DNA from: Octopus sinensis
Lineage: Eukaryota
NCBI RefSeq assembly: GCF_006345805.1
Contig: NC_043024.1
Coordinates: forward strand, 18,414,001 to 18,478,000
DNA: 64,000 nucleotides
Direction of reading: 5' to 3'
In this document: piece after piece, positions 1,522 to 59,369 of the stretch
Numbering within the stretch: the first letter of the stretch is position 1
Layout of the letters: every line of letters begins with the position of its first letter
Position numbers and translations under genes: made by a program
The notes under the pieces: generated by a model
Seen by the model: the letters and a program-made list of their open reading frames with translations, nothing else
Database searches by the model: none
What the model was told of the DNA's origin: nothing

Positions 1522-1925
1522 CGCGCAGGAGTGGCTGTGTGGTAAGTAGCTTGCTAACCAACCACATGGTTCCGGGTTCAGTCCCACTGCGTGGCATCTT
1601 GGGCAAGTGTCTTCTGCTATAGCCTCGAGCCGACCAATGCCTTGTGAGTGGATTTGGTAGACAGAAACTGAAAGAAGCCTGTCGTATATATGTATATATG
1701 TGTATGTGTGTGTTTGTGTGTCTGTGTTTGTCCTCCTAGCATTGCTTGACAACCGATGCTGGTGTGTTTACGTCCCCGTAACTTAGCGGTTCGGCAAAAG
1801 AGACCGATAGAATAAGTACTGGGCTTACAATGAATAAGTCCCGGGGGCGATTTGCTCGACTAAAGGTGGTGCTCCAGCATGGCCGCAGTCAAATGACTGA
1901 AACAAGTAAAAGAGTAAAGAGTAAT
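1522..1925 (+). mobile_element. tRNA-derived SINE, family 1 (CORE-like), full length
   Basis: A-box TGGCTGTGTGG, B-box GGTTCAGTCC, CORE-like cttgggcaagt, internal (TA/TG)n, (agtaaag)n tail. More than 12 copies in the window. Confidence 0.85.
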
Positions 1926-2168
1926 ATATCCTCCCCCGCATCTTCATACTCCTCCTCCTCCTTCTCCGCATCGTTATCATCATCATCATCATCGTCTTTG
2001 TCATCTTTTAACATCTATTTTTCCCAACTGCCATGGGCTGGATAACTTGACACATACCAGTGGCAAATGCTCACTGACAAAATTCAGTGAACATTTCCCA
2101 TCATAAGCAGGTAGACTGGGCCTGGTTTTCTTTTGAATATCCACTGTCTGAAATACTTTATTGAAATA

Positions 2169-4390: not shown

Positions 4391-4548
4391 TTTCTAAGGG
4401 TAAGCAAATAGGAAAGAACTGTTGCTACCCAAGGACCATAATCGTGTTTCACAGTTTTATGTTGTCCCAGTCTTTCCCTAACTTTCTCCAAAGATATTTC
4501 AAAACAACTTATTTGTCTTCATATTGTTTGTTGTTATTATATCTCTCT

Positions 4549-4747
4549 TTTTACTCTTTTACTTGTTTCAGTCATTTGACTGCGGCCATGCTGGAGCACC
4601 GCCTTTAATCGAGCAACTCGACCCCGGGACTTATTCTTTTGTAAGCCCAGTACTTATTCTATCGGTCTCTTTTGCCGAACGGCTAAGTGACGGGGACATA
4701 AACACACCAGCATCGGTTGTCAAGCAATGCTAGGGGGACAAACACAG

Positions 4748-4831
<84 letters not shown>

Positions 4832-4985
4832 CATATATACGACAGTCTTCTTTCAGTTTTCATCTACCAAATCCACTCACATGGCTTTGGTCGGCCCGAG
4901 GCTATAGTAGAAGACACTTGCCCAAGGTGCCACGCAGTGAGACTGAACTCGGAACCATGTGGTTGGTAAACAAGCTACTTACCAC
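4549..4985 (-). mobile_element. SINE family 1
   Basis: Reverse complement of the 1522-1925 consensus. Confidence 0.85.
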
Positions 4986-9200: not shown

Positions 9201-9204
<4 letters not shown>

Positions 9205-12200
9205 TTCACTTGCGCTAAATGAGGATGCAAAGAGAGAAGCTTGGAGACGCCACTATGAAAGGTTGCTGAATGAGGAAAATGAATGGGATAAAGAGAGTCT
9301 GCCGAATGTTGACCCAACAGAGGGACCAGCTATCCGAGTTGATAGTTCCGTGGTAGCTAAGGCAATTAGAAGCATGAAGACAGGGAAAGCCCCAGGCCCA
9401 TCAGGAATTACTGCAGAGATGCTCAAAATATCTGGTAGTGTCGGCTATAGCATAGTCACCCGTATAGTTAACCAGGTGATACACGAAGGAGTCATACCCA
9501 ATGACTGGTGTAGCAGCATAATAGTCAACTGCTACAAAGGTAAAGGCGATGCCCTAGATACAAATAACTACAGGGGCATCAAGCTGTTGGATCAGGTAAT
9601 GAAGGTTACGGAGAGGGTTATAGCCAGTTAATTAGAGAGAGAGTTAGCTTAGATGATATGCAGTTTGGGTTCGTGCCAGGGAAAAGTACTACTGATGCTA
9701 TATTCCTGGTAAGACAGCTGCAGGAGAAATACCTAGCCAAAGGTAAGCCCTTGTACTGGCTTTTGTTGACTTAGAGAAAGCCTTTGACAGGGTCCCCCGA
9801 TCCCTTATCTGGTGGTCAATGAGGAAACTAGGGATAGATGAATGGTTAGTGAGAGCTGTGCGAGCCATGTACAGAGATGCAGCTAGTAAGGTGAGGGTTG
9901 GCAACGAGTACAGTGAAGAATTCCGGGTAGAGGTTGGGGTCCACCAAGGTTCAGTCCTCAGCCCCCTCCTATTTATATTAGTCCTCCAGGCAATAACGGA
10001 AGAATTTAAGACAGGATGCCCCTGGGAGCTCCTATATGCTGATGACCTTGCTCTAATTGCTGAGTCACTATCAGAACTGGAGAAGTTTCAGGTGTGGAAA
10101 CAAGGATTAGAATCGAAGGGCCTTAGAATCAACCTAGCCAAAACCAAAGTCCTAATAAGTAGGAAGGTGGACCAACCACAAACGACTTCAGGTAGATGGC
10201 CCTGCTCGATCTGTAAAAAAGGTGTAGGTAGAAACTCCATAAGGTGCACCAAGTGTAAGCTATGGACACATAAGAGGTGCAGCAATGTCAAAGGAAGGCT
10301 AACTAAGAAAATAGTTTTTGTCTGTGGCAGATGCTCAAGAGAAATAAACACTGGAAATGTGCAGAGACCAACTTCTACCACGTTCCAGGGAGACAAACTA
10401 GAAGTAGTTGATAGCTTCCGCTACCTAGGAGACCAAGTCAGTAGCGGGGGTGGGTGTGCTGAAAGTGTAACTGCTAGAGTAAGAATAGCCTGGGCAAAGT
10501 TTAGAGAGCTTACCCCTGCTGGTGACAAAAGGCCTCTCGCTAAGAGTAAAAGGCAGACTATATGATGCGTGTGTACGTACAGCCATGCTACATGGTAGTG
10601 AAACATGGGCCGTGACAGCTGAGGATATGCGTAAGCTTGCAAGAAATGAAGCCAGTATGCTCCGATGGATGTGTAATGTCAGTGTTCATAATCGTCAGAG
10701 TGTAAGTACTTGAGAGAAAAGTTGAACCTAAGAAGTGTCAGTTGTGGTGTGCAAGAGAGACGGCTGCGCTGTATGGTCATGTGAGAGAATGGCTGAAGAT
10801 AGTTGTGTGCAAAAGTGCTACACCCTAGCAGTTGAGGGACCTGTGGAAGAGGTAGACCCAGGAAAACCTGGGACGAGGTGGTGAAGCACGACCTTCGAAC
10901 TTTAGGTCTCACCAAGGAAATGACTGAAGACCGAGTCCTATGGAAGTGTGCTGTGCATGAGAGGACCCGGCAGGACTAGTCAGGCCATATCCCGTGGCCC
11001 CTACCTGGGACGTAGTCGATCCACCTGTGCATACCTTCCTTCTTGTGACACTTGTGAAGACCTGCTGAGGCAAGTGAAAATCAATCAAAATAGATGAACA
11101 TCAATGGAATTTGTATCTTTGTGGTACCAGTGCCTGTGGCACACAAGAAAACCATCCGAACGTGGCCGTAGCCAGTACCGCGTCGACTCGCCTCTGTGAT
11201 GTGGGAACATGGTGGCACATAAAAACACCATCCGAAGACCCGGCAAGACTAGTCAGGTCATAACCCGTGGGCCCTACCTGGGACGTAGTCAGTCCACCTG
11301 TACATACCTTCCTTCTTGCGACACTTGTGAAGACCTGTTGAAGCAAGTGAAAATCAAAACAAATCAAAATAGATGAACATCAATGGAATTTGTATCTTTG
11401 TGGTACCAGTGCCGGTGGCACACAAGAGAAAACCATCCGAAAGTGGCCGTAGCCAGTACCGCATCGACTGGCCTCCGTGCTGTGGGCACATGACAAACAC
11501 CATCCGATCGTGGCCGTTCGCCAGCCTCATCTAGCACCTGTGTCGGTGGCACATAAAAACACCATCCGAAGACCCGGCAAGACTAGTCAGGCCATAACCC
11601 ATGGCCCCTACCTGGGACGTAGTCAGTCCACCTGTGCATACCTTCCTTCTTGTGACACTTGTTGAGGCAAGTGAAAATCAAAATCAAAATAAAAATAAAT
11701 CAAAATAGATGAACATCAATGGAATCTGTATCTTTGTGGTACCAGTGCCGGTGGCACACAAGAGAACCATCCGAACGTGGCCGTAGCCAGTACCGCATCG
11801 ACCGGCCTCCGTGCTGTGGGCACGTAACAAACACCATCCGATCATGGCTGTTCGCCAGCCTCATCTGCACCTGTGTCGGTGGCACATAAAAACACCTTCC
11901 GAAGACCGGCAAGACTAGTCAGTCCACCTGTGCATACCTTCCTCTTGTGACACCTGTGAAGACCGGTTGAGGCAAGTGAAAATCAAATCAAATCAAAATA
12001 GACAAAATAGATGAACATCAATGGAATTTGTCAAATCAAAATAGACAAAATAGATGAACATCAATGGAATTTGTATCTTGTGGTACCAGTGCCTGTGGCA
12101 CACAAGAAATCCATCAGTGCTGTAGTCAGTGCGGTGGGCACATGACAACCCCATCCGATCGTGGCCGTTCGCCAGCCTCATCTAGCACCTGTGTCGGTGC

Positions 12201-13833
12201 ACATAAAAACACCATCCGAAGACCCGGCAAGACTAGTCAGGCCATAACCCATGGCCCCTACCTGGGACGTAGTCAGTCCACCTGTGCATACCTTCCTTCT
12301 TGTGACACTTGTGAAGACCTGTTGAGGCAAGTGAAAATCAAATCAATCAAAACAAATCAAAATAGATGAACATCAATGGAATTTGTATCTTGTGGTACCA
12401 GTGCCGGTGGCACGTGGCACACAAGAAAACCATCCGAAAGTGGCCGTAGCCAGTACCGCATCGACTGGCCTCCGTGCTGTGGGCACATGACAAACACCAT
12501 CCGATCGTGGCCGTTCGCCAGCCTCATCTAGCACCTGTGTCGGTGGCACATAAAAACACCATCCGAAGACCCGGCAAGACTAGTCAGGCCATAACCCATG
12601 GCCCCTACCTGGGACGTAGTCAGTCCACCTGTGCATACCTTCCTTCTTGTGACACTTGTTGAGGCAAGTGAAAATCAAAATCAAAATAAAAATAAATCAA
12701 AATAGATGAACATCAATGGAATCTGTATCTTTGTGGTACCAGTGCCGGTGGCACACAAGAGAACCATCCGAACGTGGCCGTAGCCAGTACCGCATCGACC
12801 GGCCTCCGTGCTGTGGGCACGTAACAAACACCATCCGATCATGGCTGTTCGCCAGCCTCATCTGGCACCTGTGTCGGTGGCACATAAAAACACCTTCCGA
12901 AGACCCGGCAAGACTAGTCAGTCCACCTGTGCATACCTTCCTCTTGTGACACCTGTGAAGACCGGTTGAGGCAAGTGAAAATCAAATCAAATCAAAATAG
13001 ACAAAATAGATGAACATCAATGGAATTTGTCAAATCAAAATAGACAAAATAGATGAACATCAATGGAATTTGTATCTTGTGGTACCAGTGCCTGTGGCAC
13101 ACAAGAAATCCATCAGTGCTGTAGTCAGTGCGGTGGGCACATGACAAACCCCATCCGATCGTGGCCGTTCGCCAGCCTCATCTAGCACCTGTGTCGGTGG
13201 CACATAAAAACACCATCCGAAGACCCGGCAAGACTAGTCAGGCCATAACCCATGGCCCCTACCTGGGACGTAGTCAGTCCACCTGTGCATACCTTCCTTC
13301 TTGTGACACTTGTGAAGACCTGTTGAGGCAAGTGAAAATCAAATCAATCAAAACAAATCAAAATAGATGAACATCAATGGAATTTGTATCCTTGTGGTAC
13401 CAGTGCCGGTGGCACGTGGCACACAAGAAAACCATCCGAACGTGGCCGTAGCCAGTACCGCATCGACTGGCCTCCGTGCTGTGGGCACGTAACAAGCACC
13501 ATCCGATCGTGGCCGTTTTGCCAGCCTCATCTGGCACCTGTGTCGGTGGCACATAAAAACACCATCCGAGCGTGGCCGTCTGCCAGCCTCGTCTGGCACC
13601 TGTGTCAGTGGCACATAAAAACACCATCCGAGCGTGGCCGTTTTGCCAGCCTCGTCTGGCACCTGTGTCGGTGGCACATAAAATCACCCACTACACTCTC
13701 GGAGTGGTTGGCGTTAGGAAGGGCATCCAGCTGTAGAAACACTGCCAGATCTGACTGGACTGGTGCAGCTTTCGGGCTCCCCAGACCCCAGTTGAACCGT
13801 CCAACCCATGCTAGCATGGAAAGCGGACGTTAA

Positions 13834-14727: not shown

Positions 14728-14768
<41 letters not shown>

Positions 14769-14784
14769 ATGTATATATATATAT

Positions 14785-14834
<50 letters not shown>

Positions 14835-15010
14835 TATATATAAGCGGGACCAGCCATCTGAATGTGGCTAGGGACAGGGCGGGGTGGTGGGGGTGTTACT
14901 GATGCATTTAGCCCCAGGCGACTATAGACGTCACCAGGAGAGCCGACACCATCACGGTGTCCTTGCTAGCCTGCAAAGGGAGATCAGCCTCCCCGAAGAT
15001 ACGGATGCTA

Positions 15011-15052
15011 CATACGGACCGGTTTCGAGGTATTGCCTCTCGTCAGCGCATG
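15011..15052 (-). ncRNA. Type I hammerhead ribozyme (family A)
   Basis: Reverse complement: catgcg CTGACGA GAGG caata CCTC GAAA C CG G TC cgtatg. All core nucleotides canonical. Confidence 0.9.
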
Positions 15053-15531
15053 GCAAACACCGTTCTTCGTTGAGGGACTTCCTCTACAGGCTAGAAATAT
15101 ATAGATTTTCACTGTAAACACAGTCACTGGCGTCGAAAATTTGTTCGATAACAATAATAAATCTCTAAGCGAGGTATAAACAGTAACTGCTCTGTAATAC
15201 AAGCGGGATCAGCCATCTGAATGTGGCTAGGGACAGGGCGGGGTGGTGGGGGTGTTACTGATGCATTTAGCCCCAGGCGACTATAGACGTCACCAGGAGA
15301 GCCGACACCATCACGGTGTCCTTGCTAGCCTGCAAAGGGAGATCAGCCTCCCTGAAGATACGGATGCTACACACCGAATGGTTTCGAGGTAGAGCAGTTA
15401 CTGTTTATACCTCGCTTAGAGATTTATTATTGTTATCGAACAGATTTTCGACGCCAGTGACTGTGTTTACAGTGAAAATCTATATATTTCTAGCCTGTAG
15501 AGGAAGTCCCTCAACGAAGAACGGTGTTTGC

Positions 15532-15573
15532 CATGCGCTGACGAGAGGCAATACCTCGAAACCGGTCCGTGTG
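15532..15573 (+). ncRNA. Type I hammerhead ribozyme (family A)
   Basis: catgcg CTGACGA GAGG caata CCTC GAAA C CG G TC cgtgtg. Predicted cleavage after C15567. Confidence 0.9.
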
Positions 15574-15786
15574 TAGCATCCGTATCTTCGGGGAGGCTGA
15601 TCTCCCTTTGCAGGCTAGCAAGGACACCGTGATGGTGTCGGCTCTCCTGGTGACGTCTATAGTCGCCTGGGGCTAAATGCATCAGTAACACCCCCACCAC
15701 CCCGCCCTGTCCCTAGCCACATTCAGATGGCTGGTCCCGCTTATATTACAGAGCAGTTACTGTTTATACCTCGCTTAGAGATTTAT

Positions 15787-15844
<58 letters not shown>

Positions 15845-15866
15845 ATATATATATACACATGTATAT

Positions 15867-15937
<71 letters not shown>

Positions 15938-15961
15938 GTATGTATATATATATATATATAT

Positions 15962-15992
<31 letters not shown>

Positions 15993-16018
15993 ATATATAT
16001 ATATACACATGTATATAT

Positions 16019-16051
<33 letters not shown>

Positions 16052-16066
16052 ATATATATATATATG

Positions 16067-16121
<55 letters not shown>

Positions 16122-20099: not shown

Positions 20100-20935
20100 T
20101 GCTGACAGTAGACTTCAGCATTGATCGTTGCATTAGACGGTAACAATTCAAAGTGAATTACTCCATTGCAATCCAACCAGATAAAGAGAAGAAACTTTTC
20201 CCATGAAGTTCCCTTCACAGTTGTGGTTGAGCTCTTTCGCTTTTACCAAGCCACTGTTTACGACGTTTAACATTTCGATAGAAGATCCATTTTTCGTCAC
20301 CAGCCACAAGTCTATCCAAAAGGGTGAAATGAGTTCACGAGAATGGAGAGAAGAGCAGATGTCAACTCGGGATTTGCAGTTGCTTTCGGATAATTCATGA
20401 CGTACCCATTTTCCAAGTTTAGGAACCTTTCCAAGTTGTTGAAGATGACGATGAACTGTTGTATGGTTTGAACTAAGCTTTATTGCCGATTCTTCCAATA
20501 ATGCAGGACTTTCTTCTAGTAATACCTCAAGGAGCTTATCATCAAACTCAACTGGACGTCCTGTTTGATCTTTATCTTCAAGGCTAAAATCTCTACTTCT
20601 GAATTTTGCAAACCATCTTCTGCAAGTTCTTTCATTCAAGTATTCCTTCCCATAAACTGAGTGAATGTTTCAAGTCACTTCGGCTGCAGTGTGTCCTTTT
20701 TTGTACTCCTAAAGCATTATGTGCCTTAAATGCTCTTTAGAGACTTCCATGTTAGAAAGGGTTTTAATCAAAGAAATTTCAATTCTAATTACTCTGTAAA
20801 ATAATATTTAATTAGTTTAAATGTACACAAATGCATAAAAATAATTTTTAATTCCATTAGACATTCTAAATTACTATTAAATTTCATTCAATTTAAAAAA
20901 AGGTAAAATCAGACAGAACTTATGGGATGACCTGA
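20100..20935 (-). mobile_element. Mariner transposon 5' half (TIR plus N-terminal transposase)
   Basis: RRWFAKFR...GRP...GKWVRHEL (WVPHEL motif). TIR tcaggtcatcccataagttctg next to a TA at 20936-20937. Confidence 0.85.
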
Positions 20936-23062: not shown

Positions 23063-23398
23063 ATAATAATAATAATAATAATCCTTTTTACTATAGGTAC
23101 AAGGCCTGAAATTTGTATATATGTGTATGTATATATATATATATATATATGATGCATATATATATATATGTGATGTATATATGTATATATATACATATAT
23201 ATATATGATGTAAATACATATATAATATATGATATATATATATATATATATAAATTTATATATAGAGGGCATTATACATACATGCCAGGAGGCATTATAT
23301 ATACATGCCAAACGCTAAGAGGGACAATCAGTCATTTCTACCAAAAATATTACTAATCCCACCAAATGCAATTTTTCAAAGTAAGACATTTAAAAAAT

Positions 23399-23446
23399 AG
23401 ACCTGTATCACAGTGATTTCATACTTACGTAATCATCAGCAGGCCT
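23399..23446 (-). ncRNA. Type I hammerhead ribozyme (family B)
   Basis: Exact reverse complement of the plus-strand family B motif. Confidence 0.75.
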
Positions 23447-24056
23447 GAATGTATTATAAATAAACAACGACCCTGCCTCGCTTAAGCCGATCAGCTAACT
23501 GATCAACATCAACGAAGCACATGGGTGAGTTTATATATATTACATCCGGGTAAATGGTAAACTTTTACGAATTGCATTTCGGGAGATGCTGATGATTACG
23601 TAAGTATGAAATCACTGTGATACAGGTCTATTTTTTAAATGTCTTACTTTGAAAAATTGCATTCGGTGGGATTAGTAATATCTTTGGTAGAAATGACTGA
23701 TTGTCCCTCTTAGCGTTTGGCATGTATATATAATGCCTCCTGGCATGTATGTATAATGCCCTCTATATATAAATTAATATGTTCAATAAGAAATAATTAT
23801 TTTCGAAATTTTTTCTCTTATGAGGTTTTTACGCTATCTACCTGACAATTTCTTAAGTTTTCCTTATTTAGTAGTTGTCCTTAATTGCTAAATTTTTATT
23901 CCGAAAAAACTTTTCCTCTCCCGAAATGCAATTCGTAAAAGTTTACCATTTACCCGGATGTAATATATATAAACTCACCCATGTGCTTCGTTGATGTTGA
24001 TCAGTTAGCTGATCGGCTTAAGCGAGGCAGGGTCGTTGTTTATTTATAATACATTC

Positions 24057-24104
24057 AGGCCTGCTGATGATTACGTAAGTATGAAATCACTGTGATACAG
24101 GTCT
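24057..24104 (+). ncRNA. Type I hammerhead ribozyme (family B)
   Basis: aggcctg CTGATGA T TAC GTAA GTA T GAAA TCAC T GTGA TA caggtct. Predicted cleavage after 24097. Confidence 0.75.
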
Positions 24105-24533
24105 ATTTTTTAAATGTCTTACTTTGAAAAATTGCATTCGGTGGGATTAGTAATATTTTTGGTAGAAATGACTGATTGTCCCTCTTAGCGTTTGGCATGT
24201 ATATATAATGCCTCCTGGCATGTATGTATAATGCCCTCTATATATAAATTAATATGTTCAATAAGAAATAATTATTTTCGAAATTTTTTCTCTTATGAGG
24301 TTTTTACGCTATCTACCTGACAATTTCTTGTTAAGTTTTCCTTATTAAGTAGTTGTCCTTAATTGCTAAATTTTTATTCCGAAAAAACTTTTCCTCTCCC
24401 GAAATGCAATTCGTAAAAGTTTACCATTACCCGGATGTAATATATATAAACTCACCCATGTGCTTCGTTGATGTTGATCAGTTAGCTGATCGGCTTAAGC
24501 GAGGCAGGGTCGTTGTTTATTTATAATACATTC

Positions 24534-24581
24534 AGGCCTGCTGATGATTACGTAAGTATGAAATCACTGTGATACAGGTCT
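24534..24581 (+). ncRNA. Type I hammerhead ribozyme (family B)
   Basis: Identical motif. Predicted cleavage after 24574. Confidence 0.75.
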
Positions 24582-25010
24582 ATTTTTTAAATGTCTTACT
24601 TTGAAAAATTGCATTCGGTGGGATTAGTAATATTTTTGGTAGAAATGACTGATTGTCCCTCTTAGCGTTTGGCATGTATATATAATGCCTCCTGGCATGT
24701 ATGTATAATGCCCTCTATATATAAATTAATATGTTCAATAAGAAATAACTATTTTCGAAATTTTTTCTCTTATGAGGTTTTTACGCTATCACCTGACAAT
24801 TTCTTGTTAAGTTTTCCTTATTAAGTAGTTGTCCTTAATTGCTAAATTTTTATTCCGAAAAAACTTTTCCTCTCCCGAAATGCAATTCGTAAAAGTTTAC
24901 CATTTACCCGGATGTAATATATATAAACTCACCCATGTGCTTCGTTGATGTTGATCAGTTAGCTGATCGGCTTAAGCGAGGCAGGGTCGTTGTTTATTTA
25001 TAATACATTC

Positions 25011-25058
25011 AGGCCTGCTGATGATTACGTAAGTATGAAATCACTGTGATACAGGTCT
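25011..25058 (+). ncRNA. Type I hammerhead ribozyme (family B)
   Basis: Identical motif. Predicted cleavage after 25051. Confidence 0.75.
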
Positions 25059-25684
25059 ATTTTTTAAATGTCTTACTTTGAAAAATTGCATTTGGTGGGA
25101 TTAGTAATATTTTTGGTAGAAATGACTGATTGTCCCTCTTAGCGTTTGGCATGTATATATAATGCCTCCTGGCATGTATGTATAATGCCTCTATATATAA
25201 ATTAATATGTTCAATAAGAAATAATTATTTTCGAAATTTTTTCTCTTATGAGGTTTTTACGCTATCTACCTGACAATTTCTTGTTAAGTTTTCCTTATTA
25301 AGTAGTTGTCCTTAATTGCTATATATATATATATATATAACATATATATGTGTATATATATATACATATATACATACATAATATATATATATATATATAT
25401 ATGTGTCTGTGTGTGTGTGTGTGTGTACATATACATACATATATATCTGAGTATAGTTTTAAAATCTCTAAATGAAATCTAGGCAGTAACGATACTCTTC
25501 AGTAAAGTCTATTTGCCAATGTAAGGGGGCTGTCCTATGCAGAACTATGTTATTACCTTTTAACCCCAGGAAAGCATCTTTTCAAACTGTTTATAAATTG
25601 CAAGTTCGAGTGACTGCCACCTCATTGGTCAACAAGTAAGATCATGCAACTGCCATCTCATTGGTCAACAAACAGCTGAAGCCT

Positions 25685-26170
25685 GACCAGCTCCCTGCCT
25701 GGCCAGCTCCTTGCCCGGCCAGCTCCCTGCCCGGCCAGCTCCCTGCCCGGCCAGCTCCCTGCCCGGCCAGCTCCCTGCCCGGCCAGCTCCCTGCCCAGCC
25801 AGCTCCCTGCCCGACCAGCTCCCTGCCTGGCCAGCTCCCTGCCTGACCAGCTCCCTGCCTGGCCAGCTCCCTGCCTGGCCAGCTCCCTGCCTGACCAGCT
25901 CCCTGCCTGGCCAGCTCCCTGCCTGGCCAGCTCCCTGCCTGGCCAGCTCCCTGCCTGGCCAGCTCCCTGCCTGGCCAGCTCCTTACCTGGCCAGCTCCCT
26001 GCCTGGCCAGCTCCCTGCCTGACCAGCTCCCTGCCTGGCCAGCTCCTTGCCCAGCCAGCTCCCTGTCTGGCCAGCTCCCTGCCTGACCAGCTCCCTGCCT
26101 GGCCAGCTCCCTGCCTGGCCAGCTCCCTGCCCGACCAGCTCCCTGCCTGACCAGCTGCCTGCCTGGCCTG
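25685..26170. repeat. GC-rich 16-bp minisatellite (ccagctccctgcctgg)n, about 30 copies
   Basis: Directly visible. Followed by an RTE 3'-UTR end at 26170-26232. Confidence 0.9.
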
Positions 26171-26639
26171 CTCCATGTCAAACTGTCCAACCCATGCCAG
26201 CATGGAAAACAGACGTTAAATGATGATGATGATATAGGCCTTGTGTTTGTCTCTATCTCAACGTATAGACATTAGTAGGTATGTATATGTATATGTATGT
26301 ATTCCACACACATGCACACACACACACACATATGCACACACAACTTTTCTCCATGATTGTTTTAAAAGATCTTCTGCCTTATACATTTCATAATTGAATG
26401 ATTTCTATCCTGCAAGGATTTGGTAGATAAGATCTGTTAATTAACTCTACCCATTATTATAAACTCTGTTGAGTTCTTGGAGGCTCTCTAACCAACACAA
26501 CTCAACAGAATTTTGTATTCTTCTTCTATTTCTGTATTATCAATCATAAATATATAGCACACACACACACACACACATACACATGCATGAATATATGTGT
26601 GTGTGTGTGTGTGCGTATACATGTATAAGCATATATATT

Positions 26640-33478: not shown

Positions 33479-33480
<2 letters not shown>
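33030..33480 (-). mobile_element. Unclassified (AAT)n-tailed retroposon
   Basis: Reverse complement of 22610-23062. Confidence 0.7.
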
Positions 33481-33521
<41 letters not shown>

Positions 33522-34326
33522 GCAAATATATATATCCTTTTCCAGTGACAAAAGGTCACTGATCTCAAAAACGTGTAAACAAGCAATAATAAATCTCTGA
33601 ACGAGGTATAAACAGTAGCTGCACGACAATGTGAAGTATATTTGCCACTTAACTGTGGCTAACCACTACAGAAAGTGTGTCAATAGCCAGCTGGAGAAGA
33701 TGCTCTCCTGGGGCTAGAAGCTACAGTAGCACCCACCTTTAGTGGTAAATATACTACACATATATATATGCAACTTATACATAAATGGCAATTTCTCTCT
33801 CTCTGTCTGTCTGCTACCATCTTGCTGCCTACACCATTTAACCAATCTTGATGAAACTGCATACATGTTAATCTAGCATCCAGTTGAATTATAAGCTAAT
33901 TGGATTTCAATAAAAATCTATAATGCCCCCCCCCTAGGAGGGGAGCGCTTTCTTGGTGTTACCGGTCAACTGATTTATTTTACTTGATTGGGCTATTATT
34001 TGATAAAATGAGAAGGGTGCAAGAGTGTTAGTGTGAGGGAAATGTGGTGGCATAGTGAGTACAGCTGATATCAGAGAAAGAGAGAACAAAGTTGTGTAAG
34101 CAACAAATGTGGAGTGGCATTAGGACGGTAATGTTTATACAGCTGTCATTCAGGGATACACAGATGACGCTACAAACATAATTTCATAAATATATAGATA
34201 CATGCATACACACACACACGCTCACACGATGCACATGCATGCACATACACACACAGTGTATGTGTCCATCTGCTGTCCATCACATTTCTGCTGTCCATCA
34301 CAAAGAAACACTCACAGACAGACGCA

Positions 34327-36572: not shown

Positions 36573-37032
36573 GTATATGTGTTTTTGTGTGTATTTCCAT
36601 TAAGTGTTCTTTCTATGGAACCTTCTTATTCTTACAACGGATACATTTCGGGGTCATATTCCAAATTTCTTTGCTCATACCCATTTTTTCGGTCAATACC
36701 ACAATGTACATTTTAGTACAGTATTTAATTCACTCTGTGTTTCATCTTGTACTACAATGATTATTTTGGATAACATTCATATAAAACACCTATAGAAAGC
36801 CGGAATCACTTTGTCAATTCAACGATTGATCTGCAGACAACAGAATGGTAAAAGAAAGACTTCCTTACTGACAAAAACCTGATTATGTTAGAATGTGATA
36901 TTTATCTTTCATTCTATAGAATAATTCCATTGAAGATATTCTACCATACACTATATATGTGTGATGTATATATATGATGTACTGTTCTGTGATAAGTACA
37001 TTTATATATGTGGTAGATATATATATATCTAT

Positions 37033-37064
<32 letters not shown>

Positions 37065-37175
37065 GTACATACATATATATATATATGTACATAATATATA
37101 ATATATATATATGCATATATGTTTTATATATATATATAATATATATATATTATATATATATATATATATATACAC

Positions 37176-37235
<60 letters not shown>

Positions 37236-37359
37236 CATACATATATATATATATATATATAAATAATGGAGGGAATATTATTCTAACTTACAGGTAAAAA
37301 ATTCATTTTAGATATACTGAATAAATTTCACAAAATATAATATATATATATATAAAAAT

Positions 37360-37650
37360 TAGAAAAAAACACCTTCTATTAATTCAAAATGAACAATTAA
37401 ATTACGCCATCTAGAAAATTACATATAATAGAAATATTAAAATCAAAATAACAATAATATACCAATGATTAAGTAAATTGCTAAATAATAATAAAAGACA
37501 TCAAATATATTCGTTTTTATTATTATTTTGCAATTTAATTAATCATCAGTATATTATTGTTATTTTAATTTTAATGTTTCTATTATGCGTAATTTTCTAG
37601 ATGGTATAAATTAATTGTTCATTTTGAATTGATCAAAGGTGGCTTTTTTC

Positions 37651-37652
<2 letters not shown>
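37360..37652. repeat. Diverged AT-rich inverted repeat, ~140-bp arms
   Basis: ccatctagaaaattac/gtaattttctagatgg and caaaatgaacaatt/aattgttcattttg pairs. Confidence 0.75.
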
Positions 37653-37704
<52 letters not shown>

Positions 37705-38376: not shown

Positions 38377-38960
38377 TATCATCATCATCATCATCATCGT
38401 TTAACGTCCGTTTTCTATACTGGCATGGGTTGGACGGTTTGATTGAGGTCTGGGGAGCCAGTGGCTGACCCAGGCTCCAGTCTGATCTGGCAGAGTTTCT
38501 ACAGCTGGATGCCCTTCCTAATGCCAACCACTCCGTGAGTGTAGTGGGTGCTTTTTACATGTCACCAGCAAAGGAGTGAGTCAGGCGGGCCTGGCATTGA
38601 TCCCATGCAGGTGGTGCTTTTTATGTGCCACTGGCACAAGAGCCAGTTAGGGGATACTGGCATTGGCCACAATCAGTTGATGCTTTTTACATGCTACCAG
38701 CATGGGTGCCAGTCAGGCAGACCTGGCATCAACCATGTTTGGATGGTATTTTTTACATGCCACTGGCATGGGTGCCAGTCATGGGGCATTGGCCACAGCT
38801 ACGATATTGGTTTTACTTGACTCAACAGGTCTTCTCAAGCATATCATATTGCCCGACACATCAGGGGCATTCTTAACAGGGTCAGACATATGTGACTGCG
38901 ATCTCAGTTTACTTGTCGGGTCTTCTCAAATCACAGCATATCTCCAAAGGTCCCAGTCTA
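38377..38960 (-). mobile_element. RTE 3'-UTR copy with internal modules
   Basis: (ATC)n tail and repeated ttttacatgccac modules. Confidence 0.75.
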
Positions 38961-48850: not shown

Positions 48851-49077
48851 TATGAAATAACAAATTACAGTTTAAAATCACATTATTATAAAAGTCAAAG
48901 AAAAGGGAACAGAAAATTAGAGAGAGAAAGGAAATAAAAATAGAGATAGAGAGAGTGAAATGGTGTTCAAATAAGCATCGAATGAAAGTTAGATACTTCG
49001 TTCAGCTTGAGAAACATACACTTACAAAAACACACACATAAAATGACATGTATATCTACATAAATATAAGCATATAA

Positions 49078-49960
49078 TTTTTCTCTATCCGCCATTTCTT
49101 GGTGTAACTACACATAAATCCAAAATGCAGCTGTTTGTAAAGGCTAATGAGACTCACACCCTCAGTCTGACAGGGAATGAAACTATTTATGATATCAAGA
49201 ACATGCTTTTCAATTTGGGTGGATTTGATATCAGCCAACCCCCTTTGCTTGCGAAGACATGTTGGGGCAAGCGAAATCGAAATCGAATTGAACCAGCCAG
49301 GATCCCTGGTCTGGTGGTACGTAAAAAGCACTATCCGACTCGTGGCCGATGCCAGCGCCGCCTCGACTGGCTTCCGATGCCGGTGGCACGTAAAATACAC
49401 CAATCCGACCGTGGCCGTTGCCAGCCTCGCCTGGCACCAGTGCAGGTGGCACGTAAAAAGCACCCACTACACTCACGGAGTGGTTGGCGTTAGGAAGGGC
49501 ATCCAGCTGTAGAAACATTGCCAGATAAGACTGGAGCCTGGTGCAGCCTTCTGGCTTCCCAGATCCCTGGTCGAACCGTCCAACCCATGCTAGCATGGAG
49601 AACGGACGTTAAACAATGATGATGATGATGAGCAAGTTTTAACATTCAATGGCTCCCCACTTGCCAATGACTTCTCTGTTGGGTCATTGCAAGATGTGAA
49701 CACTCTTCACTTGGATATGAGAATGCTTGGAGGCAAAGTCCATGGTTCTTTGGCTCGAGCTGGCAAAGTGAAGGGATAAACCCCTAAAGTGGAGAAGCAA
49801 GAAAAGAAGAAACAGAGGACTGGTCGTGCTAAGCGACATATGCAATACAACAAGAGATTTGTCAATGTGGTTGCTGGTTTCGGACGAAGGAAAGGACCAA
49901 ATGCCAATTCTTAGAGTTCTGAAAATGTAATTACTAAACTTGTAATAAAAATAAATAATT
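49078..49960 (+). pseudogene. FAU: Processed pseudogene of FAU (ubiquitin-like FUBI / 40S ribosomal protein eS30 fusion)
   Basis: ATG at 49125 MQLFVK...; resumes at 49630 EQVL...[30 protein letters not shown]...[17 protein letters not shown] (stop 49912-49914). Premature TAA at 49777, no spliceosomal intron evident, pyrimidine-rich 5' end, AATAAA at 49944, LINE-UTR insertion. Confidence 0.92.
49233..49630 (+). mobile_element. RTE 3'-UTR copy inserted in the FAU pseudogene
   Basis: Matches the reverse complement of 53150-53530 and has a (GAT)n tail. Confidence 0.85.
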
Positions 49961-53149: not shown

Positions 53150-55631
53150 TCATCATCATCATCATCGTTTAACGTCCGTTCTCCATGCTAGCATGGGTTG
53201 GACGGTTCGACCGGGGATCTGGGAAGCCAGAAGGCTGCACCAGGCTCCAACCTTGATCTGGCAGTGTTTCTACAGCTGGATGCCCTTCCTAACGCCAACC
53301 ACTCCGTGAGTGTAGTGGGTGCTTTTTATGTGCCACCTGCACAGGTGCCAGGTGAGGCTGGCAATGGCCACGGTCGGATTGGTGTATTTTATGTGCCACC
53401 GGCACGGAAGCCAGACGAGGCGGTGCTGGCATCGGCCACGAGTCGGATGGTGCTTTTTACGTACCACCAGACCAGGGATCCTGGCTGGTTCAATTCGATT
53501 TCGATTTCGCTTGCCCCAACATGTCTTCGCAAGCAAGGGGGTTGGCATGGGTGCCTGCCGTATGGTCAGATTGGTGTATTTTATGTGCCACCGGCACGGA
53601 AGCCAGTGGAGGCGGCGCTGGCATCGGCCACGAGTCAGATAGTGCTTTTTACGTACCACCAGACCAGGGAACCTGGCTGGTTCAATTCGATTTCGCTTGC
53701 CCCAACATGTCTTCGCAAGCAAGGGGGTTGGCATGGGTGCCTGTCGTACGGTCAGATTGGTGTATTTTATGTGCCACCGGCACGGAAGCCAGTGGAGGCG
53801 GCGCTGGCATCGGCCACGAGTCGGATAGTGCTTTTTACGTACCACCAGACCAGGGATCCTGGCTGGTTCAATTCAATTTTGACTTCGATTTCGATTTTGC
53901 TTGCCCCAACATGTCTTCACAAGCAAAGGGGGTTGGCATGGGTGCCTGTCGTCGGATGAGGTTCTATATCGACTTCGCTTGCCTCAACAGGTCTTTGTGT
54001 CCAAGGGAGGAAAGGCATTCATAAGTGGGCTGGGCTCACTTGTCCTGCCTGGTCTTCTCACGTACAGAATATTTCCAAAGGTCTCGGTCGCTGGTCATTT
54101 CCTCAGTGAGGCCTAAAGTTCGAAGGTCATGCTTCACCACCTCGTCCCAGGTTTTCCTGGTCTACCTCTTCCACGGGTTCCCTCAACTGCTAAGGATTGG
54201 CACTTTCTCACACACCTATCTTCATCCATTCTCGCCACATGACCATACCAGCGCAATCGTCTCTCTTGCACACCACAACTGATGCCTCTTAGGTACAACA
54301 TTTCTCTCAAGGTGCTAACGCTCTGTCGAGTATGTACACTGACATTACACATCCATCGGAGCATACTGGCTTCATTCCTCACGAGCTTACGCATATCCTC
54401 GGCAGTCACGGCCCATGTTTCACTGCCATGTAGCATGGCTGTTCGTACACACGCATCATACAGTCTGCCTTTTACTCTGAGCTCTGAGCGAGAGGCCTTT
54501 AGTCACCAGCAGAGGTAAGAGCTCCCTAAACTTTGCCCAGGCTATTCTTATTCTAGCAGTTACACTTTCAGCGCACCCACCCCCCCCACTACTGACTTGG
54601 TCACCAAGATAATGGAAGCTATCAACTACTTCTAGTTTTTCCCCTTGGAAAGTGACTGAAGTTATTTTCTGCAGATTTTCAGAGGTTAATGCTCCTGAGC
54701 ATCTGCCACATACAAAAACTATCTTCCCAGTTAGCCTACCTTTGACATTGCTGCACCTCTTATGTGTCCATAGCTTACACTGGGTACATCTTATAGAGTT
54801 TCTACTACTACACCTTTTCTACAGATCGAGCAGGGCCATCTTCCTGAAGACATTTGTGGATTGTCTACCTTCCTACTTATTAGGACTTTGGTTTTAGCTA
54901 GGTTGACTCTAAGGCCCCTCGATTCTAAACCTCCTTCCACACCTGGAACTTCTCCTCCAGCTCTGATAGTGACTCAGCAATAAGAGCAAGGTCGTCAGCG
55001 TAGAGGAGCTCCCAGGGACAACCTGTCTTGAATTCCTCCGTAATTGCCTGTAGGACTATGATAAATAGGAGGGGGCTGAGTACTGAACCCTGGTGGACCC
55101 CAACCTCTACTTTGAATTCTTCTGTGTACATGTTGCTAACCCTAACCTTACTTACAGCATCTCTGTACATGGCTTGCACAGTCCTCACCAGCCATTCATC
55201 TATCCCTAGTTTCCTCATTGACCACCAGATAAGGATCGGGGGACCCTATCAAAAGCTTTCTCCATGTCAACAAAAGCCAGGTACAGGGGCTTATCTTTGG
55301 CTAGGTATTTCTCCTGCAGCTGCCTTACCAGGAATATAGCATCCGTGGTACTTTTCCCTTGCACAACGAAACCAAACTGCATCTCATCTAAACTAACTCT
55401 CTCTCTAATTAGTGGGCTATGACCCTCTCCGTAACCTTCATTACTTGATCCAACAGCTTGATACCTCTGTAATTATTTGTATCTAGGGCATCACCTTTAC
55501 CTTTGTAGCAGTTGACTAGTATGCTGCTACACCAGTCATTGGGTATGACTCCTTCGTGTATCACCTGGTTAACTATACGGGTGACTAGGTTATAGCCGAC
55601 ACTGCCAGATATTTTGAGCATCTCTGCAGTA
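53147..55631 (-). mobile_element. Second 5'-truncated PHD-type RTE LINE copy
   Basis: MLKISGSVGY..., GVHQGSVLSPLLF, YADD, finger at ~54690-54845, different 3'-UTR modules, (ATC)n tail. Confidence 0.9.
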
Positions 55632-56621: not shown

Positions 56622-57767
56622 ATGTATGTATGTATGAATGTATGTATGTATGTATGTATGTATGTATGTATGTATGTATGTATGTTGTATGTATGTATGT
56701 ATGTGTGTATGTGTGTATGTATGTATGTATGTATGTATGTATGTATGTATGTATGTATGTATGTATGTGTGTGTGTATGTATGTATGTATGTGTGTGTGT
56801 ATGTATGTATGTATGTAGGTATGTATGTATGTATGTTGTATGTTGTGTATGTGTATGTAGGTATGTATGTGTGTATTATGTATGTATGTATGTATGTATG
56901 TATTATGTATGTGTGTATTATGTATGTATGGATGTATGTGTGTGTATGTATGTATGTATGTATGTATGTTATGTATGTATGTATGTATGTATGATGTATG
57001 TATGTGTGTGTGTATGTATGTATGTATGTATGTATGTATGTATGTGTGTATGTTGTATGTATGTTGTATGATGTATGTAGTATGTATGTGTGTGTGTATG
57101 TATGTATGTATGATGTATGTATGTATGTATGTATTATGTTGTATGTATGTATGTGTGTATGTGTGTGTAGTATGTAGGTATGTATGTATGTATGTGTGTA
57201 TGTATGTATGTATGTATGTATGTATGTATGTGTATGTATGTGTGTGTGTATGTATGTAGTATGTATGTATGTATGTATGTATGTGTGTATGTATGTATGT
57301 ATGTATGTATGTATGTATGTATGTGTGTGTGTATGTATGTATGTATGTATGTATGTATGTATGTATGTATGTATGTATGGATGTATGTATGTATGTATGT
57401 GTGTATGTATTATGTATGTATGTATGTATGTGTGTATGTGGTGTATGTATGTATGTATGTATGTATGTATGTATGTGGTATGTATGTGTGTAGTATGTAT
57501 GTATGTGTATGTATGTATGTATGTATGTATGTGTGTGTATGTATGTATGTATGTATGTATGTATGTAGTGTGTATGTATGTATGTATGTAGTATGTATGT
57601 ATGTATGTATGTAGTGTGTGGTGTGTATGTATGTATGTATGTGTATGTATGTGTGTGTATGTATGTATGTATGTATGTATGTGTATGTATGTATGGTGTA
57701 TGTATGTATGTATGTATGTATGTATGTATGTATGTTATGTATGTATGTTGTTGTATGTATGTATGTG

Positions 57768-57799
<32 letters not shown>

Positions 57800-59345: not shown

Positions 59346-59369
59346 TATACACACACACATAAACATACA

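What the first reader, a model, noticed from the sequence alone, without database searches (positions are those of the whole stretch)
14838..15790. Retrozyme-like 359-bp tandem repeat with a fully canonical type I hammerhead ribozyme
Seen: a 359-bp monomer repeated head to tail. Each complete monomer carries catgcg-CUGACGA-GAGG(caaua)CCUC-GAAA-C(CG)G-UC-cguRug, with every core position canonical. Stem I extends by eye through acgg/ccgu and cgaaga/ucuucg. Stem III is minimal and sits in the palindrome ACCGGT. There is no coding capacity. Known: animal non-LTR retrozymes are non-coding tandem repeats of a few hundred bp with one type I HHR per monomer; they are transcribed, self-cleaved and circularised, and minimal palindromic stem III is associated with dimeric cleavage. 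Inference: this is a cephalopod retrozyme that would yield a 359-nt linear or circular RNA. I cannot confirm whether the family has been described.
Basis: partly seen in the sequence, partly recalled or inferred. Interest (0 to 1): 0.92.

Follow-up and report, generated by a model that had tools for sequence, protein, structure and literature searches.

The report
Octopus hammerhead-ribozyme repeat, inverted insertion
This is a non-coding 359-bp repeat from an octopus-like genome that carries a textbook self-cleaving hammerhead ribozyme, but it sits as two short arrays joined head-to-head inside a (TA)n microsatellite, so it looks like the inert footprint of a retrozyme copied in by a Penelope-like retrotransposon rather than a working source of circular RNA.

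Summary
The ribozyme motif is real, but the layout was misread. Period 359 is confirmed. However, 14838-15790 is not one head-to-tail array. It is 1.54 units on the minus strand (14838-15390) joined head-to-head at 15390/15391 to 1.11 units on the plus strand (15391-15790), and both outer ends run into (TA)n.

Two complete type I hammerheads exist, one per strand. The core is fully canonical, helix I has 6 bp, helix II has 4 bp, and helix III is the ACCGGU palindrome. A formal descriptor finds only these two sites in 64 kb, against 0.003 expected. Rfam's Hammerhead_1 model gives only 12.3 bits (threshold 34). The monomer is non-coding and folds very stably (z = -4.7).

No strand carries two complete ribozymes, so this locus cannot release a 359-nt RNA on its own.

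A second, unrelated 477-bp hammerhead repeat (23248-25321) has the same architecture: an inverted truncated copy, a tandem array, and (TA)n on both flanks. That is the published signature of Penelope-like element integration.

The host is Octopus-like. I found no paper describing cephalopod retrozymes.

Verdict: a new member of a known kind (animal non-LTR retrozymes), of moderate interest.

The parts
14730..14842 (.). Left flanking (TA)n microsatellite; it abuts the 3' end of the minus-strand array.
   Evidence: TRF period 2, 57 copies; sequence read.
14838..15193 (-). Full unit of the minus-strand array (monomer positions 1-356). Its 3' end merges into (TA)n inside the A/T run TTATATTA.
   Evidence: Inverted arm I1, 99% complementary to 15391-15746; gap-free alignment; A/T-run map.
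15011..15052 (-). Complete type I hammerhead on the minus strand: CAUGCG-CUGACGA-GAGG(CAAUA)CCUC-GAAA-C(CG)G-UC|CGUAUG. The predicted cut is after C17 = 15017.
   Evidence: Descriptor hits. The single difference from the plus copy turns U.G into U-A in helix I.
15194..15390 (-). 5'-truncated unit of the minus-strand array (monomer positions 163-359). It is the most divergent copy (96-97% identity).
15370..15390 (-). Hammerhead remnant. It starts in loop II, lacks CUGACGA and the 5' half of helix II, and its helix III is mutated (ACCGGUCC to ACCAUUCG). It should be non-functional.
   Evidence: Mismatches at monomer positions 174, 175 and 178 and the truncation point; sequence.
15390..15391 (.). 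Head-to-head junction where the 5' ends of the two arrays meet. There is at most 1 nt of overlap and no (TA)n between them. The junction is not a symmetric palindrome centre: the arrays are 162 nt out of phase.
15391..15790 (+). Plus-strand array: one full unit (15391-15749) plus the first 41 nt of the next (15750-15790). Its 3' end lies in the A/T run ATTTATTATT and is followed by (TA)n.
   Evidence: D3 repeat 100% identical at spacing 359.
15532..15573 (+). Complete type I hammerhead on the plus strand. The predicted cut is after C17 = 15567.
   Evidence: All core positions align to the Rfam RF00163 consensus.
15515..15590 (+). Extended hammerhead domain: 6-bp proximal helix I, a 7x6-nt internal loop 1, then 4 bp, a 1-nt bulge and 6 bp of distal helix I. 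This continues into a roughly 50-bp quasi-rod in the monomer MFE.
   Evidence: ViennaRNA folds.
15790..16118 (.). Right flanking (TA)n microsatellite.
   Evidence: TRF period 2, 166 copies.
33524..33661 (-). Diverged fragment of the same family (monomer positions 324-359 then 1-99). It is contiguous across the unit boundary, has no hammerhead, and its 3' end lies in the A/T run TATATATTT next to (TAA)n.
   Evidence: Local alignment score 105 against a shuffle maximum of 54; blastn.
23248..25321 (+). Second, unrelated hammerhead repeat family with the same architecture. It was not part of the finding and is used here as corroboration. An inverted 5'-truncated copy (23248-23586, minus strand) is joined head-to-head to a 3.64-unit, 477-bp tandem array (23587-25321, plus strand), with (TA)n on both flanks.

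Best explanation
This locus is a retrotransposed, probably dead-end copy of a 359-nt non-coding element of the animal non-LTR retrozyme type, in an Octopus-like genome.

Inferred life cycle of the family, taken from published work on the class:
1. Longer tandem master copies elsewhere in the genome are transcribed.
2. Hammerheads of neighbouring units pair through the ACCGGU palindrome to form a double hammerhead.
3. They cut after GUC, releasing 359-nt RNAs that fold into a stable quasi-rod.
4. A tRNA ligase circularises these RNAs.
5. A Penelope-like element (PLE) reverse transcriptase/endonuclease copies them back into DNA.

What is shown for this locus is the structure of the product:
- Two cDNA-like arrays, each longer than one unit, lie in opposite orientation.
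- Their 3' ends are anchored in a (TA)n microsatellite at A/U-rich patches of the monomer.
- Their 5' ends are joined head-to-head.

The inferred mechanism is target-primed reverse transcription from both nicked strands of the (TA)n target, on a circular or multimeric RNA template.

Each strand kept only one complete ribozyme, so the locus itself cannot release unit-length RNA. If it is transcribed, a single cut is possible after 15567 (+) or after 15017 (-), and that cut would need a partner hammerhead supplied in trans.
For: Shown here:
- The canonical core and helices are present in exactly two sites, both in this repeat, with 0.0033 expected per shuffle. A relaxed descriptor hits only this family and the 477-bp family, with 0 of 400 shuffles giving any hit.
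- Three metagenome contigs carry hammerheads with the same loop II (CAAUA) and the same GAAACCGGUC. Their helix II pairs covary (AGG/CCU, AUC/GAU, ACC/GGU), although the search pattern left those positions free. Two of them reach Rfam hammerhead models at E about 1e-5.
- The monomer is non-coding and strongly self-paired: circular MFE -122.6 kcal/mol, z = -4.7.
- The arrays are 1.54 and 1.11 units long. None of their four ends coincides with the cleavage site, so the template was not a cleaved linear monomer.
- The three 3' ends of family pieces in the window (monomer positions 41, 99 and 356) fall in three of the four A/T-only runs of 6 nt or more. Those runs cover 9.2% of the monomer.
- An unrelated 477-bp hammerhead family shows the same layout of inverted truncated copy, tandem array and (TA)n on both sides. 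These two loci are the two largest inverted repeats in the window.
- (TA)n covers only about 6% of the window.

From the literature:
- PLE insertions are partial tandems, often with an adjacent inverted 5'-truncated copy, and show a (TA)n or microsatellite bias (PMC8557442).
- Pairs of hammerheads 100-700 bp apart on opposite strands were noted in Schistosoma (PMC4209133).
- Animal retrozymes are proposed PLE derivatives (PMC7229834; bioRxiv 10.64898/2026.07.22.740005).
Against: - Rfam Hammerhead_1 scores only 12.3 bits against a gathering score of 34, and nothing reaches gathering score.
- No other full copy could be examined, because no cephalopod genome can be searched by DNA with these tools. 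Copy number, master arrays and expression are therefore unknown.
- Monomer GC is 50.1%, at or above the upper bound reported for animal retrozymes (<45-50%).
- No PLE RT or GIY-YIG motif occurs in the window, and similarity to a resident PLE pseudo-LTR is untested.
- The 5'-truncated unit is more diverged (about 3%) than the two long arms are from each other (0.6%). A single rolling-circle copy of one circle does not predict this. It needs a heterogeneous multimeric template, error-prone junction repair, or later gene conversion between the arms.
Confidence: 0.68

Rival explanations
1. The 359-bp unit is not an independent retrozyme. It is the pseudo-LTR (3'/5' terminal) part of an autonomous Penelope-like element, and this locus is a heavily 5'-truncated PLE insertion in which only terminal repeat material was copied.
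For: The architecture (partial tandem, inverted copy, (TA)n target) is exactly that described for PLEs themselves. PLE pseudo-LTRs carry type I hammerheads. Li et al. find that retrozymes and pseudo-LTRs are sister sequences.
Against: The end of the unit runs directly into the start of the next unit in three independent pieces (minus array, plus array, and the fragment at 33524-33661), with no RT-coding sequence between them. PLE hammerheads are usually minimal variants without helix III or loop 1, whereas this one has the canonical 6-bp/4-bp design with an internal loop 1. There is no PLE ORF motif in the window.
Confidence: 0.15
2. It is ordinary satellite or segmental DNA. A short tandem repeat carrying a relic hammerhead was duplicated and inverted by DNA-level events (fold-back, replication template switching or unequal exchange) at a fragile (TA)n tract, with no RNA intermediate.
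For: (TA)n tracts are prone to hairpins and breakage. The arms are 99% identical, as expected of a recent DNA duplication. Only about 2.6 units are present.
Against: The junction is not a symmetric palindrome centre: the arms are 162 nt out of phase with a 197-nt spacer. An unrelated family shows the same layout in another (TA)n tract 8 kb away. The outer ends sit at A/T-rich microhomologies of the monomer. Both families keep intact ribozyme cores in every untruncated unit.
Confidence: 0.1
3. The inverted arrangement is an assembly artefact (for example a chimeric long read), and the true locus is a simple tandem array.
For: PLE-type inverted or tandem structures are known to trouble assemblies. 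I cannot inspect the reads.
Against: Missed-adapter artefacts give symmetric palindromes, and this junction is asymmetric. The copies differ at 8 of 553 positions. A second locus of a different family has the same structure.
Confidence: 0.04
4. The hammerhead-like motif is a chance match in a repeat with no ribozyme activity.
For: The Rfam score is far below threshold. A relaxed descriptor would give on the order of a hundred chance hits in a genome of a few Gb (extrapolated from 0.0033 per 64 kb).
Against: The motif occurs in a repeat and is kept in both complete units, with a pair-preserving change. Helix I continues for a further 10 bp. 0 of 20,000 monomer shuffles give a hit. Relatives with the same loop II and helix III covary in helix II.
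Confidence: 0.03

Closest known systems
Animal non-LTR retrozymes (Cervera & De la Pena 2020, PMC7229834), e.g. the 350-390-bp retrozymes of the mussel Mytilus galloprovincialis and the 330/350-bp repeats of the axolotl
   Same: Non-coding unit of a few hundred bp with head-to-tail periodicity. One type I hammerhead per unit. A highly self-paired monomer RNA. A weak palindromic helix III implying dimeric cleavage, as in the newt and axolotl motifs. A mollusc host.
   Different: At this locus there are only 1.54 and 1.11 units, in opposite orientations, so no unit is flanked by two ribozymes. GC is 50% rather than below 45%. Helix III has a 2-nt loop instead of a tetraloop. Expression and circles are untested. 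No cephalopod example was found in the literature searched.
Penelope-like element insertions (Craig et al. 2021, PMC8557442; Cervera & De la Pena 2014, PMC4209133)
   Same: A partial tandem with an adjacent inverted 5'-truncated copy. Insertion into a (TA)n microsatellite, so target-site duplications cannot be read. A hammerhead in the repeated part. Paired hammerheads on opposite strands a few hundred bp apart.
   Different: No RT or GIY-YIG ORF: the whole unit is 359 nt. The hammerhead is the canonical form with helix III and loop 1, not the minimal PLE variant.
Newt satellite 2 / Schistosoma Sm-alpha hammerheads (Rfam RF00163 seed type)
   Same: Type I topology. Core CUGAcGAG...CGAAAC..GUC aligns position by position. 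Loop II CAAUA resembles the consensus CAAAUA. The short helix III requires a double hammerhead.
   Different: The primary sequences of helices I and II differ, so the Rfam score is 12.3 bits. The helix III loop is 2 nt rather than 4 nt.
L1 'twin priming' inversions
   Same: Two cDNAs primed from the two nicked target strands give a head-to-head inverted structure, with both 3' ends at the target.
   Different: Here the template is a short, repeated or circular non-coding RNA, priming is at A/U-rich internal sites rather than a poly(A) tail, and the presumed enzyme is a PLE RT/GIY-YIG endonuclease. This is an analogy of mechanism only.

Membership tests
Hammerhead ribozyme, type I (canonical metazoan form) | Conserved core: C3 U4 G5 A6 N7 G8 A9, G12 A13 A14, A15.1-U16.1, H17 | tested here: met
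   CUGACGA ... GAAA ... UC is present in both complete copies and aligns column by column to the RF00163 consensus.
Hammerhead ribozyme, type I (canonical metazoan form) | Three helices around the core: helix I open (about 6 bp, then loop 1), helix II about 4 bp and capped, helix III short (1-2 bp) with a 2-4-nt palindromic loop | tested here: met
   Helix I has 6 bp plus an internal loop and 10 more bp. Helix II is GAGG/CCUC with loop CAAUA. Helix III is A-U, C-G with loop CG inside the palindrome ACCGGU. This matches the description in PMC4209133.
Hammerhead ribozyme, type I (canonical metazoan form) | Rfam RF00163 gathering score (34 bits) | tested here: not met
   12.3 bits, E = 3.4 in a 131-nt search, and no hit at gathering score. 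Relatives with the same loop II and helix III (L001, L003) reach 31-32 bits. The shortfall comes from the helix sequences, not from the core.
Hammerhead ribozyme, type I (canonical metazoan form) | Self-cleavage after H17, and loop 1-loop 2 tertiary contact | not testable with these tools
   Needs a transcription/cleavage assay. The thermodynamic model only shows that helix III is unfavourable in cis (+5.9 kcal/mol) and favourable as an intermolecular 6-bp duplex (-9.7 kcal/mol).
Animal non-LTR retrozyme | Head-to-tail tandem repeats of about 150-450 bp | tested here: inconclusive
   Period 359 is confirmed and unit ends are contiguous in three pieces. However, each strand holds fewer than two units and TRF does not call an array.
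Animal non-LTR retrozyme | A type I hammerhead in every repeat unit (the definition of an 'active' retrozyme in bioRxiv 10.64898/2026.07.22.740005) | tested here: not met
   There is one complete hammerhead per strand, and the third copy is truncated and mutated. The locus is therefore filed as an inactive copy of a retrozyme-type family, not as an active retrozyme.
Animal non-LTR retrozyme | No protein-coding capacity | tested here: met
   The longest ORF is 77 aa on the antisense strand, with no homologue in 5.8 billion proteins.
Animal non-LTR retrozyme | Low GC content (<45-50%) | tested here: not met
   Monomer GC is 50.1%, against 38.6% for the window. The 477-bp family has 32.7%.
Animal non-LTR retrozyme | Highly self-paired monomer RNA | tested here: met
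   Circular MFE -122.6 kcal/mol, against -96.8 +/- 5.5 for shuffles, z = -4.7.
Animal non-LTR retrozyme | Expressed as linear and circular unit-length RNA; many genomic copies | not testable with these tools
   No cephalopod genome or transcriptome can be searched by DNA here. There is only one diverged fragment in the window and none in a 21-kb O. vulgaris sample.
Penelope-like-element-type integration product | Partial tandem with an adjacent inverted 5'-truncated copy | tested here: met
   seen again in the 477-bp family. Literature description.
Penelope-like-element-type integration product | Microsatellite, especially (TA)n, target | tested here: met
   (TA)n lies on both flanks of both loci. 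(TA)n covers about 6% of the window.
Penelope-like-element-type integration product | RT plus GIY-YIG ORF (autonomous element) | tested here: not met
   There is no such ORF in the unit and no GIY-YIG or PLE RT motif in any frame of the window. The only RTs are LINE-type RVT_1+PHD. The element would therefore be non-autonomous.
Penelope-like-element-type integration product | Sequence similarity to the pseudo-LTR of a resident PLE | not testable with these tools

The most novel reading that the evidence does not exclude
The two loci in this window would be direct structural footprints showing that retrozyme RNAs are integrated by the Penelope-like machinery. On this reading, both nicked strands of a (TA)n target prime reverse transcription at A/U-rich patches of a circular or multimeric ribozyme RNA, producing head-to-head arrays longer than one unit. 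That would turn the phylogenetic link between retrozymes and PLEs into a mechanistic one, in a lineage (cephalopods) where retrozymes are undescribed. As a by-product, each such insertion is a near-perfect inverted repeat of about 350 bp. If transcribed, it would form a long dsRNA hairpin, a natural substrate for RNAi or for the very active ADAR editing of octopuses.
Probability: 0.3. Interest if true: 0.65.

Novelty: new member of a known kind. Interest (0 to 1): 0.45.

Why it matters
Retrozymes are among the few sources of abundant ribozyme-made circular RNAs in animals, and how they move is still inferred rather than shown.

This window adds a cephalopod to their host range. It contains two unrelated hammerhead repeat families within 10 kb of each other.

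Both insertions also carry the hallmark layout of Penelope-like element integration: an inverted copy, a partial tandem, and a (TA)n target. This gives a concrete, genome-wide testable prediction about the integration mechanism.

For this particular locus the practical message is negative. It is most likely an inert insertion, not a producer of a 359-nt circle. The neighbouring 477-bp array is the better candidate for bench work.

Tried and rejected
- Rfam at gathering score on the whole window gave nothing. In E-value mode on 1.2 kb, only AT-rich microRNA-like noise appeared. On 131 nt, Hammerhead_1 gave 12.3 bits. The 477-bp family's motif gave no hammerhead hit at all.
- I searched for other copies through proteins. 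The 77-aa antisense ORF has no homologue.
- Exact look-ups of two window ORFs (the LINE RT at 9819-10565 and the mariner-like ORF at 20148-20639), done to identify the source genome, found nothing.
- I searched for other copies by DNA. The degenerate hammerhead pattern gave three non-octopus metagenome contigs and nothing in viral or prokaryotic genome collections. A conserved non-ribozyme segment and the 477-family motif gave nothing.
- A 21-kb sample of the O. vulgaris genome around a LINE copy holds no copy of either family.
- There are no tRNA-like genes in the window.
- There is no GIY-YIG or PLE RT motif in six frames. Pfam on the larger ORFs shows only LINE RVT_1+PHD and a Mos1-type HTH.
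- The 359 and 477 units share no sequence similarity.
- I considered a symmetric fold-back duplication and a missed-adapter artefact and rejected both, because the junction is 162 nt out of phase.
- I considered that the template was a hammerhead-cleaved linear monomer and rejected it, because no array end lies at the cleavage site.
- The double-hammerhead could not be evaluated as a nested structure in ViennaRNA because it is kissing-type, so only the duplex energy is given.
Full report
**What is in the sequence**

The stretch 14838-15790 contains a 359-bp repeat, but not as one head-to-tail array.
- Direct repeats with spacing 359 exist twice: 14838-15032 = 15197-15391 (96%) and 15391-15431 = 15750-15790 (100%).
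- The dominant feature is an inverted repeat. 14838-15193 is 99% complementary to 15391-15746, and 15153-15391 is 97% complementary to 15552-15790.
- I number the monomer from 15391 (m1) to 15749 (m359). The minus-strand array 14838-15390 aligns without gaps to m163-m359 followed by m1-m356, with 8 mismatches in 553 nt. The plus-strand array is m1-m359 followed by m1-m41.
- The two arrays therefore meet 5' end to 5' end at 15390/15391, with no microsatellite between them.
- Both 3' ends run into (TA)n tracts: 14730-14842 and 15790-16118.
- TRF does not report a 359 period because each strand holds fewer than two units.

**The ribozyme motif**

Two complete copies exist: 15532-15573 on the plus strand and 15011-15052 on the minus strand. 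Both read CAUGCG-CUGACGA-GAGG(CAAUA)CCUC-GAAA-C(CG)G-UC followed by CGURUG.
- Every core position is canonical. Helix I has 6 bp and helix II has 4 bp with a G10.1-C11.1 base pair. C17 is 15567 on the plus strand and 15017 on the minus strand.
- The only difference between the two copies changes a U.G pair to U-A in helix I.
- Helix I continues after a 7x6-nt internal loop into ACGG/CCGU and CGAAGA/UCUUCG (15515-15524 / 15580-15590). In the full monomer it extends to a quasi-rod of about 50 bp.
- The third copy (15370-15390, minus strand) starts inside loop II at the junction, lacks CUGACGA, and has a mutated helix III, so it should be dead.

Statistical support:
- A formal descriptor (helix I of at least 5 bp, the core, helix II of 4 bp, GAAA, helix III of at least 1 bp, UH) finds exactly these two sites in 64 kb.
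- The expectation is 0.0033 sites per dinucleotide shuffle of the window.
- 0 of 20,000 shuffles of the monomer give a hit.

Rfam is not decisive here:
- Nothing reaches a gathering score.
- Hammerhead_1 gives 12.3 bits against a threshold of 34, although the alignment matches all core columns.

**Independent support for the motif class**

I scanned JGI metagenomes with CTGANGAGNNNCAATANNNCGAAACCGGTC and found three AT-rich, eukaryote-like contigs.
- In all three, the positions left free by the pattern form perfect helix II pairs of different sequence: AUC/GAU twice and ACC/GGU, against AGG/CCU here.
- Two of them reach Rfam hammerhead models with E about 1e-5.
- The design also fits the published description of the canonical metazoan type I hammerhead: helix I 6 bp, helix II 4 bp, helix III 1-2 bp with a 2-4-nt palindromic loop, active as a dimer in tandem transcripts (PMC4209133).
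- In ViennaRNA, closing helix III within one molecule costs +5.9 kcal/mol, whereas the intermolecular ACCGGU duplex gives -9.7 kcal/mol. Dimeric cleavage is therefore the reasonable expectation.

**Other properties of the unit**
- It is non-coding. The longest ORF is 77 aa on the antisense strand, with no homologue among 5.8 billion proteins.
- The circular monomer folds to -122.6 kcal/mol, against -96.8 +/- 5.5 for shuffles (z = -4.7).
- GC is 50.1% in a window of 38.6%. This is at or above the range reported for animal retrozymes.

**Host**
- A LINE reverse transcriptase in the window is 82% identical to an Octopus vulgaris protein and 70% identical to an O. bimaculoides protein.
- A 21-kb O. 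vulgaris locus shares many dispersed repeats with the window at 80-91% identity.
- 'Cephalopod' is therefore supported, but the species is not established.

**Consequence of the real layout**

On each strand there is only one complete hammerhead. A transcript of either strand can be cut once at most, and even that cut probably needs a partner ribozyme in trans. No 359-nt unit is bracketed by two cleavage sites. By the definition used in the 2026 preprint, which requires a hammerhead in every repeat, this is not an active retrozyme locus.

**A second locus with the same architecture**

The 477-bp tandem repeat at 23587-25321 has 3.64 units that are at least 99% identical.
- It is joined head-to-head at 23586/23587 to an inverted 5'-truncated copy at 23248-23586.
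- It lies between two (TA)n tracts: 23116-23264 and 25320-25402.
- Each unit carries GGCCUG-CUGAUGA-U UAC(GUAA)GUA U-GAAA-UCA(CUG)UGA-UA|CAGGUC. This is a type I hammerhead-like motif with a U.U mismatch at the base of helix II, a feature also reported for an axolotl retrozyme ribozyme.
- A relaxed descriptor hits only the two families, and 0 of 400 shuffles give any hit.
- Three consecutive complete motifs (cuts predicted after 24097, 24574 and 25051) bracket two full units, so this array could release 477-nt RNAs.
- The unit has 32.7% GC, z = -6.5, and no similarity to the 359-nt unit.
- Rfam does not recognise its motif, so it is less secure as a ribozyme.
- The two loci are the two largest inverted repeats in the whole window.

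**How the locus most likely arose**

The published signature of Penelope-like element (PLE) insertions has three parts: a partial tandem, often an adjacent inverted 5'-truncated copy, and a strong bias for microsatellites such as (TA)n that hides target-site duplications (PMC8557442). Pairs of hammerheads a few hundred bp apart on opposite strands were noted in Schistosoma. Both loci here match that signature.

Further details fit priming on RNA:
- The three 3' ends of 359-family pieces in the window fall in three of the four A/T-only runs of at least 6 nt. These ends are m41, m356, and m99 of a diverged fragment at 33524-33661 next to (TAA)n. The four runs make up 9.2% of the monomer.
- The arrays exceed one unit.
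- No array end lies at the cleavage site.
- The central junction is 162 nt out of phase, which argues against a simple fold-back duplication or a missed-adapter artefact.

My reading is target-primed reverse transcription from both nicked strands of a (TA)n target, on a circular or multimeric retrozyme RNA, followed by head-to-head joining. This step is inferred, not shown. No PLE RT or GIY-YIG motif is present in the window, so any partner element acts in trans.

One loose end remains. The truncated unit differs from the other two copies by about 3%, while those two differ from each other by 0.6%. That fits a heterogeneous multimeric template, error-prone junction repair, or later gene conversion between the long arms better than a single round-the-circle copy.

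**Comparison with what is known, and novelty**

The closest class is the animal non-LTR retrozymes, for example the 350-390-bp units in mussels (PMC7229834). These have recently been argued to be PLE derivatives in vertebrates. Full-text searches combining retrozyme or hammerhead with octopus, cephalopod, squid and related terms found no description in cephalopods. That only covers the library held here.

I therefore rate this as a new member of a known kind. The most useful point is the PLE-type insertion architecture seen in two unrelated ribozyme repeats. Interest is moderate, at 0.45. The motif and family assignment would not surprise a specialist, and this specific locus is probably inert. 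The architecture does, however, offer a testable handle on how retrozymes integrate.

Noticed in passing
window 23248-25321 (flanks 23116-23264 and 25320-25402): A second, unrelated hammerhead-like repeat family. The 477-bp unit forms a 3.64-unit plus-strand array joined head-to-head to a 339-nt inverted truncated copy, with (TA)n on both flanks. Three complete motifs in tandem are predicted to cut after 24097, 24574 and 25051. There is a U.U mismatch at 10.1/11.1. GC is 32.7% and fold z = -6.5. Rfam does not recognise the motif. It is a better candidate than the flagged locus for producing unit-length or circular RNA.
   Followed up: partly
window 33524-33661 (minus strand): A diverged fragment of about 138 nt from the 359 family (monomer positions 324-359 then 1-99). 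It has no hammerhead, is contiguous across the unit boundary, and ends in an A/T run next to (TAA)n at 33480-33519. It shows the family has older copies in the genome.
   Followed up: partly
L001 179-220(-), L003 115-187(-), L002 1203-1244(-) (JGI metagenome contigs): Hammerheads in AT-rich eukaryote-like contigs share loop II CAAUA and GAAACCGGUC with the octopus motif, while helix II covaries. L001 scores 31.1 bits on Hammerhead_1 and L003 scores 31.9 bits on HH9, both just under their gathering scores. L002 also has a large inverted repeat downstream of its motif.
   Followed up: partly
window 37340-37496 / 37515-37671: An AT-rich near-palindrome (157-nt arms, 86% complementary, 18-nt spacer) lies between two (TA)n tracts (37017-37265 and 37651-37696). 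No hammerhead core is seen. It could be a MITE or another head-to-head insertion.
   Followed up: no
window 11211-13569 and 13484-13688; related copies near 38549-38729, 49056-49630, 53150-53960: A 334-bp tandem array (7.1 copies, 74% matches), followed by a 63-bp array. Both are built from a unit containing GGCACATAAAAACACC..., which recurs in both orientations across the window and in the O. vulgaris locus L004. No hammerhead motif and no tRNA-like gene were detected.
   Followed up: no
window 9201-11195 (+) and 54031-55631 (-): Two copies of a LINE-type element (RVT_1 plus a PHD finger) lie in opposite orientation. The best protein match is Octopus vulgaris at 82% identity. A near-relative (70% identity) is annotated in a 'Herbaspirillum sp.' MAG, which looks like host or eukaryote contamination of that bin.
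   Followed up: partly
window 20148-20639 (minus strand): A mariner/Mos1-like transposase remnant, with a weak HTH_48 Pfam match.
   Followed up: no
window 25681-26174 and 56622-59346: A 16-bp minisatellite (GCCTGGCCAGCTCCCT, 31 copies) lies just downstream of the 477-bp array. There is also a 2.7-kb (ATGT)n tract. Overall the window is unusually rich in microsatellites, with (TA)n alone covering about 6% of it.
   Followed up: no
window 1539-1929 / 4539-4985: Inverted repeats of about 100-160 nt (91-94% complementary) lie 2.6-3.1 kb apart. They could be the ends of a DNA transposon or oppositely oriented SINE copies.
   Followed up: no
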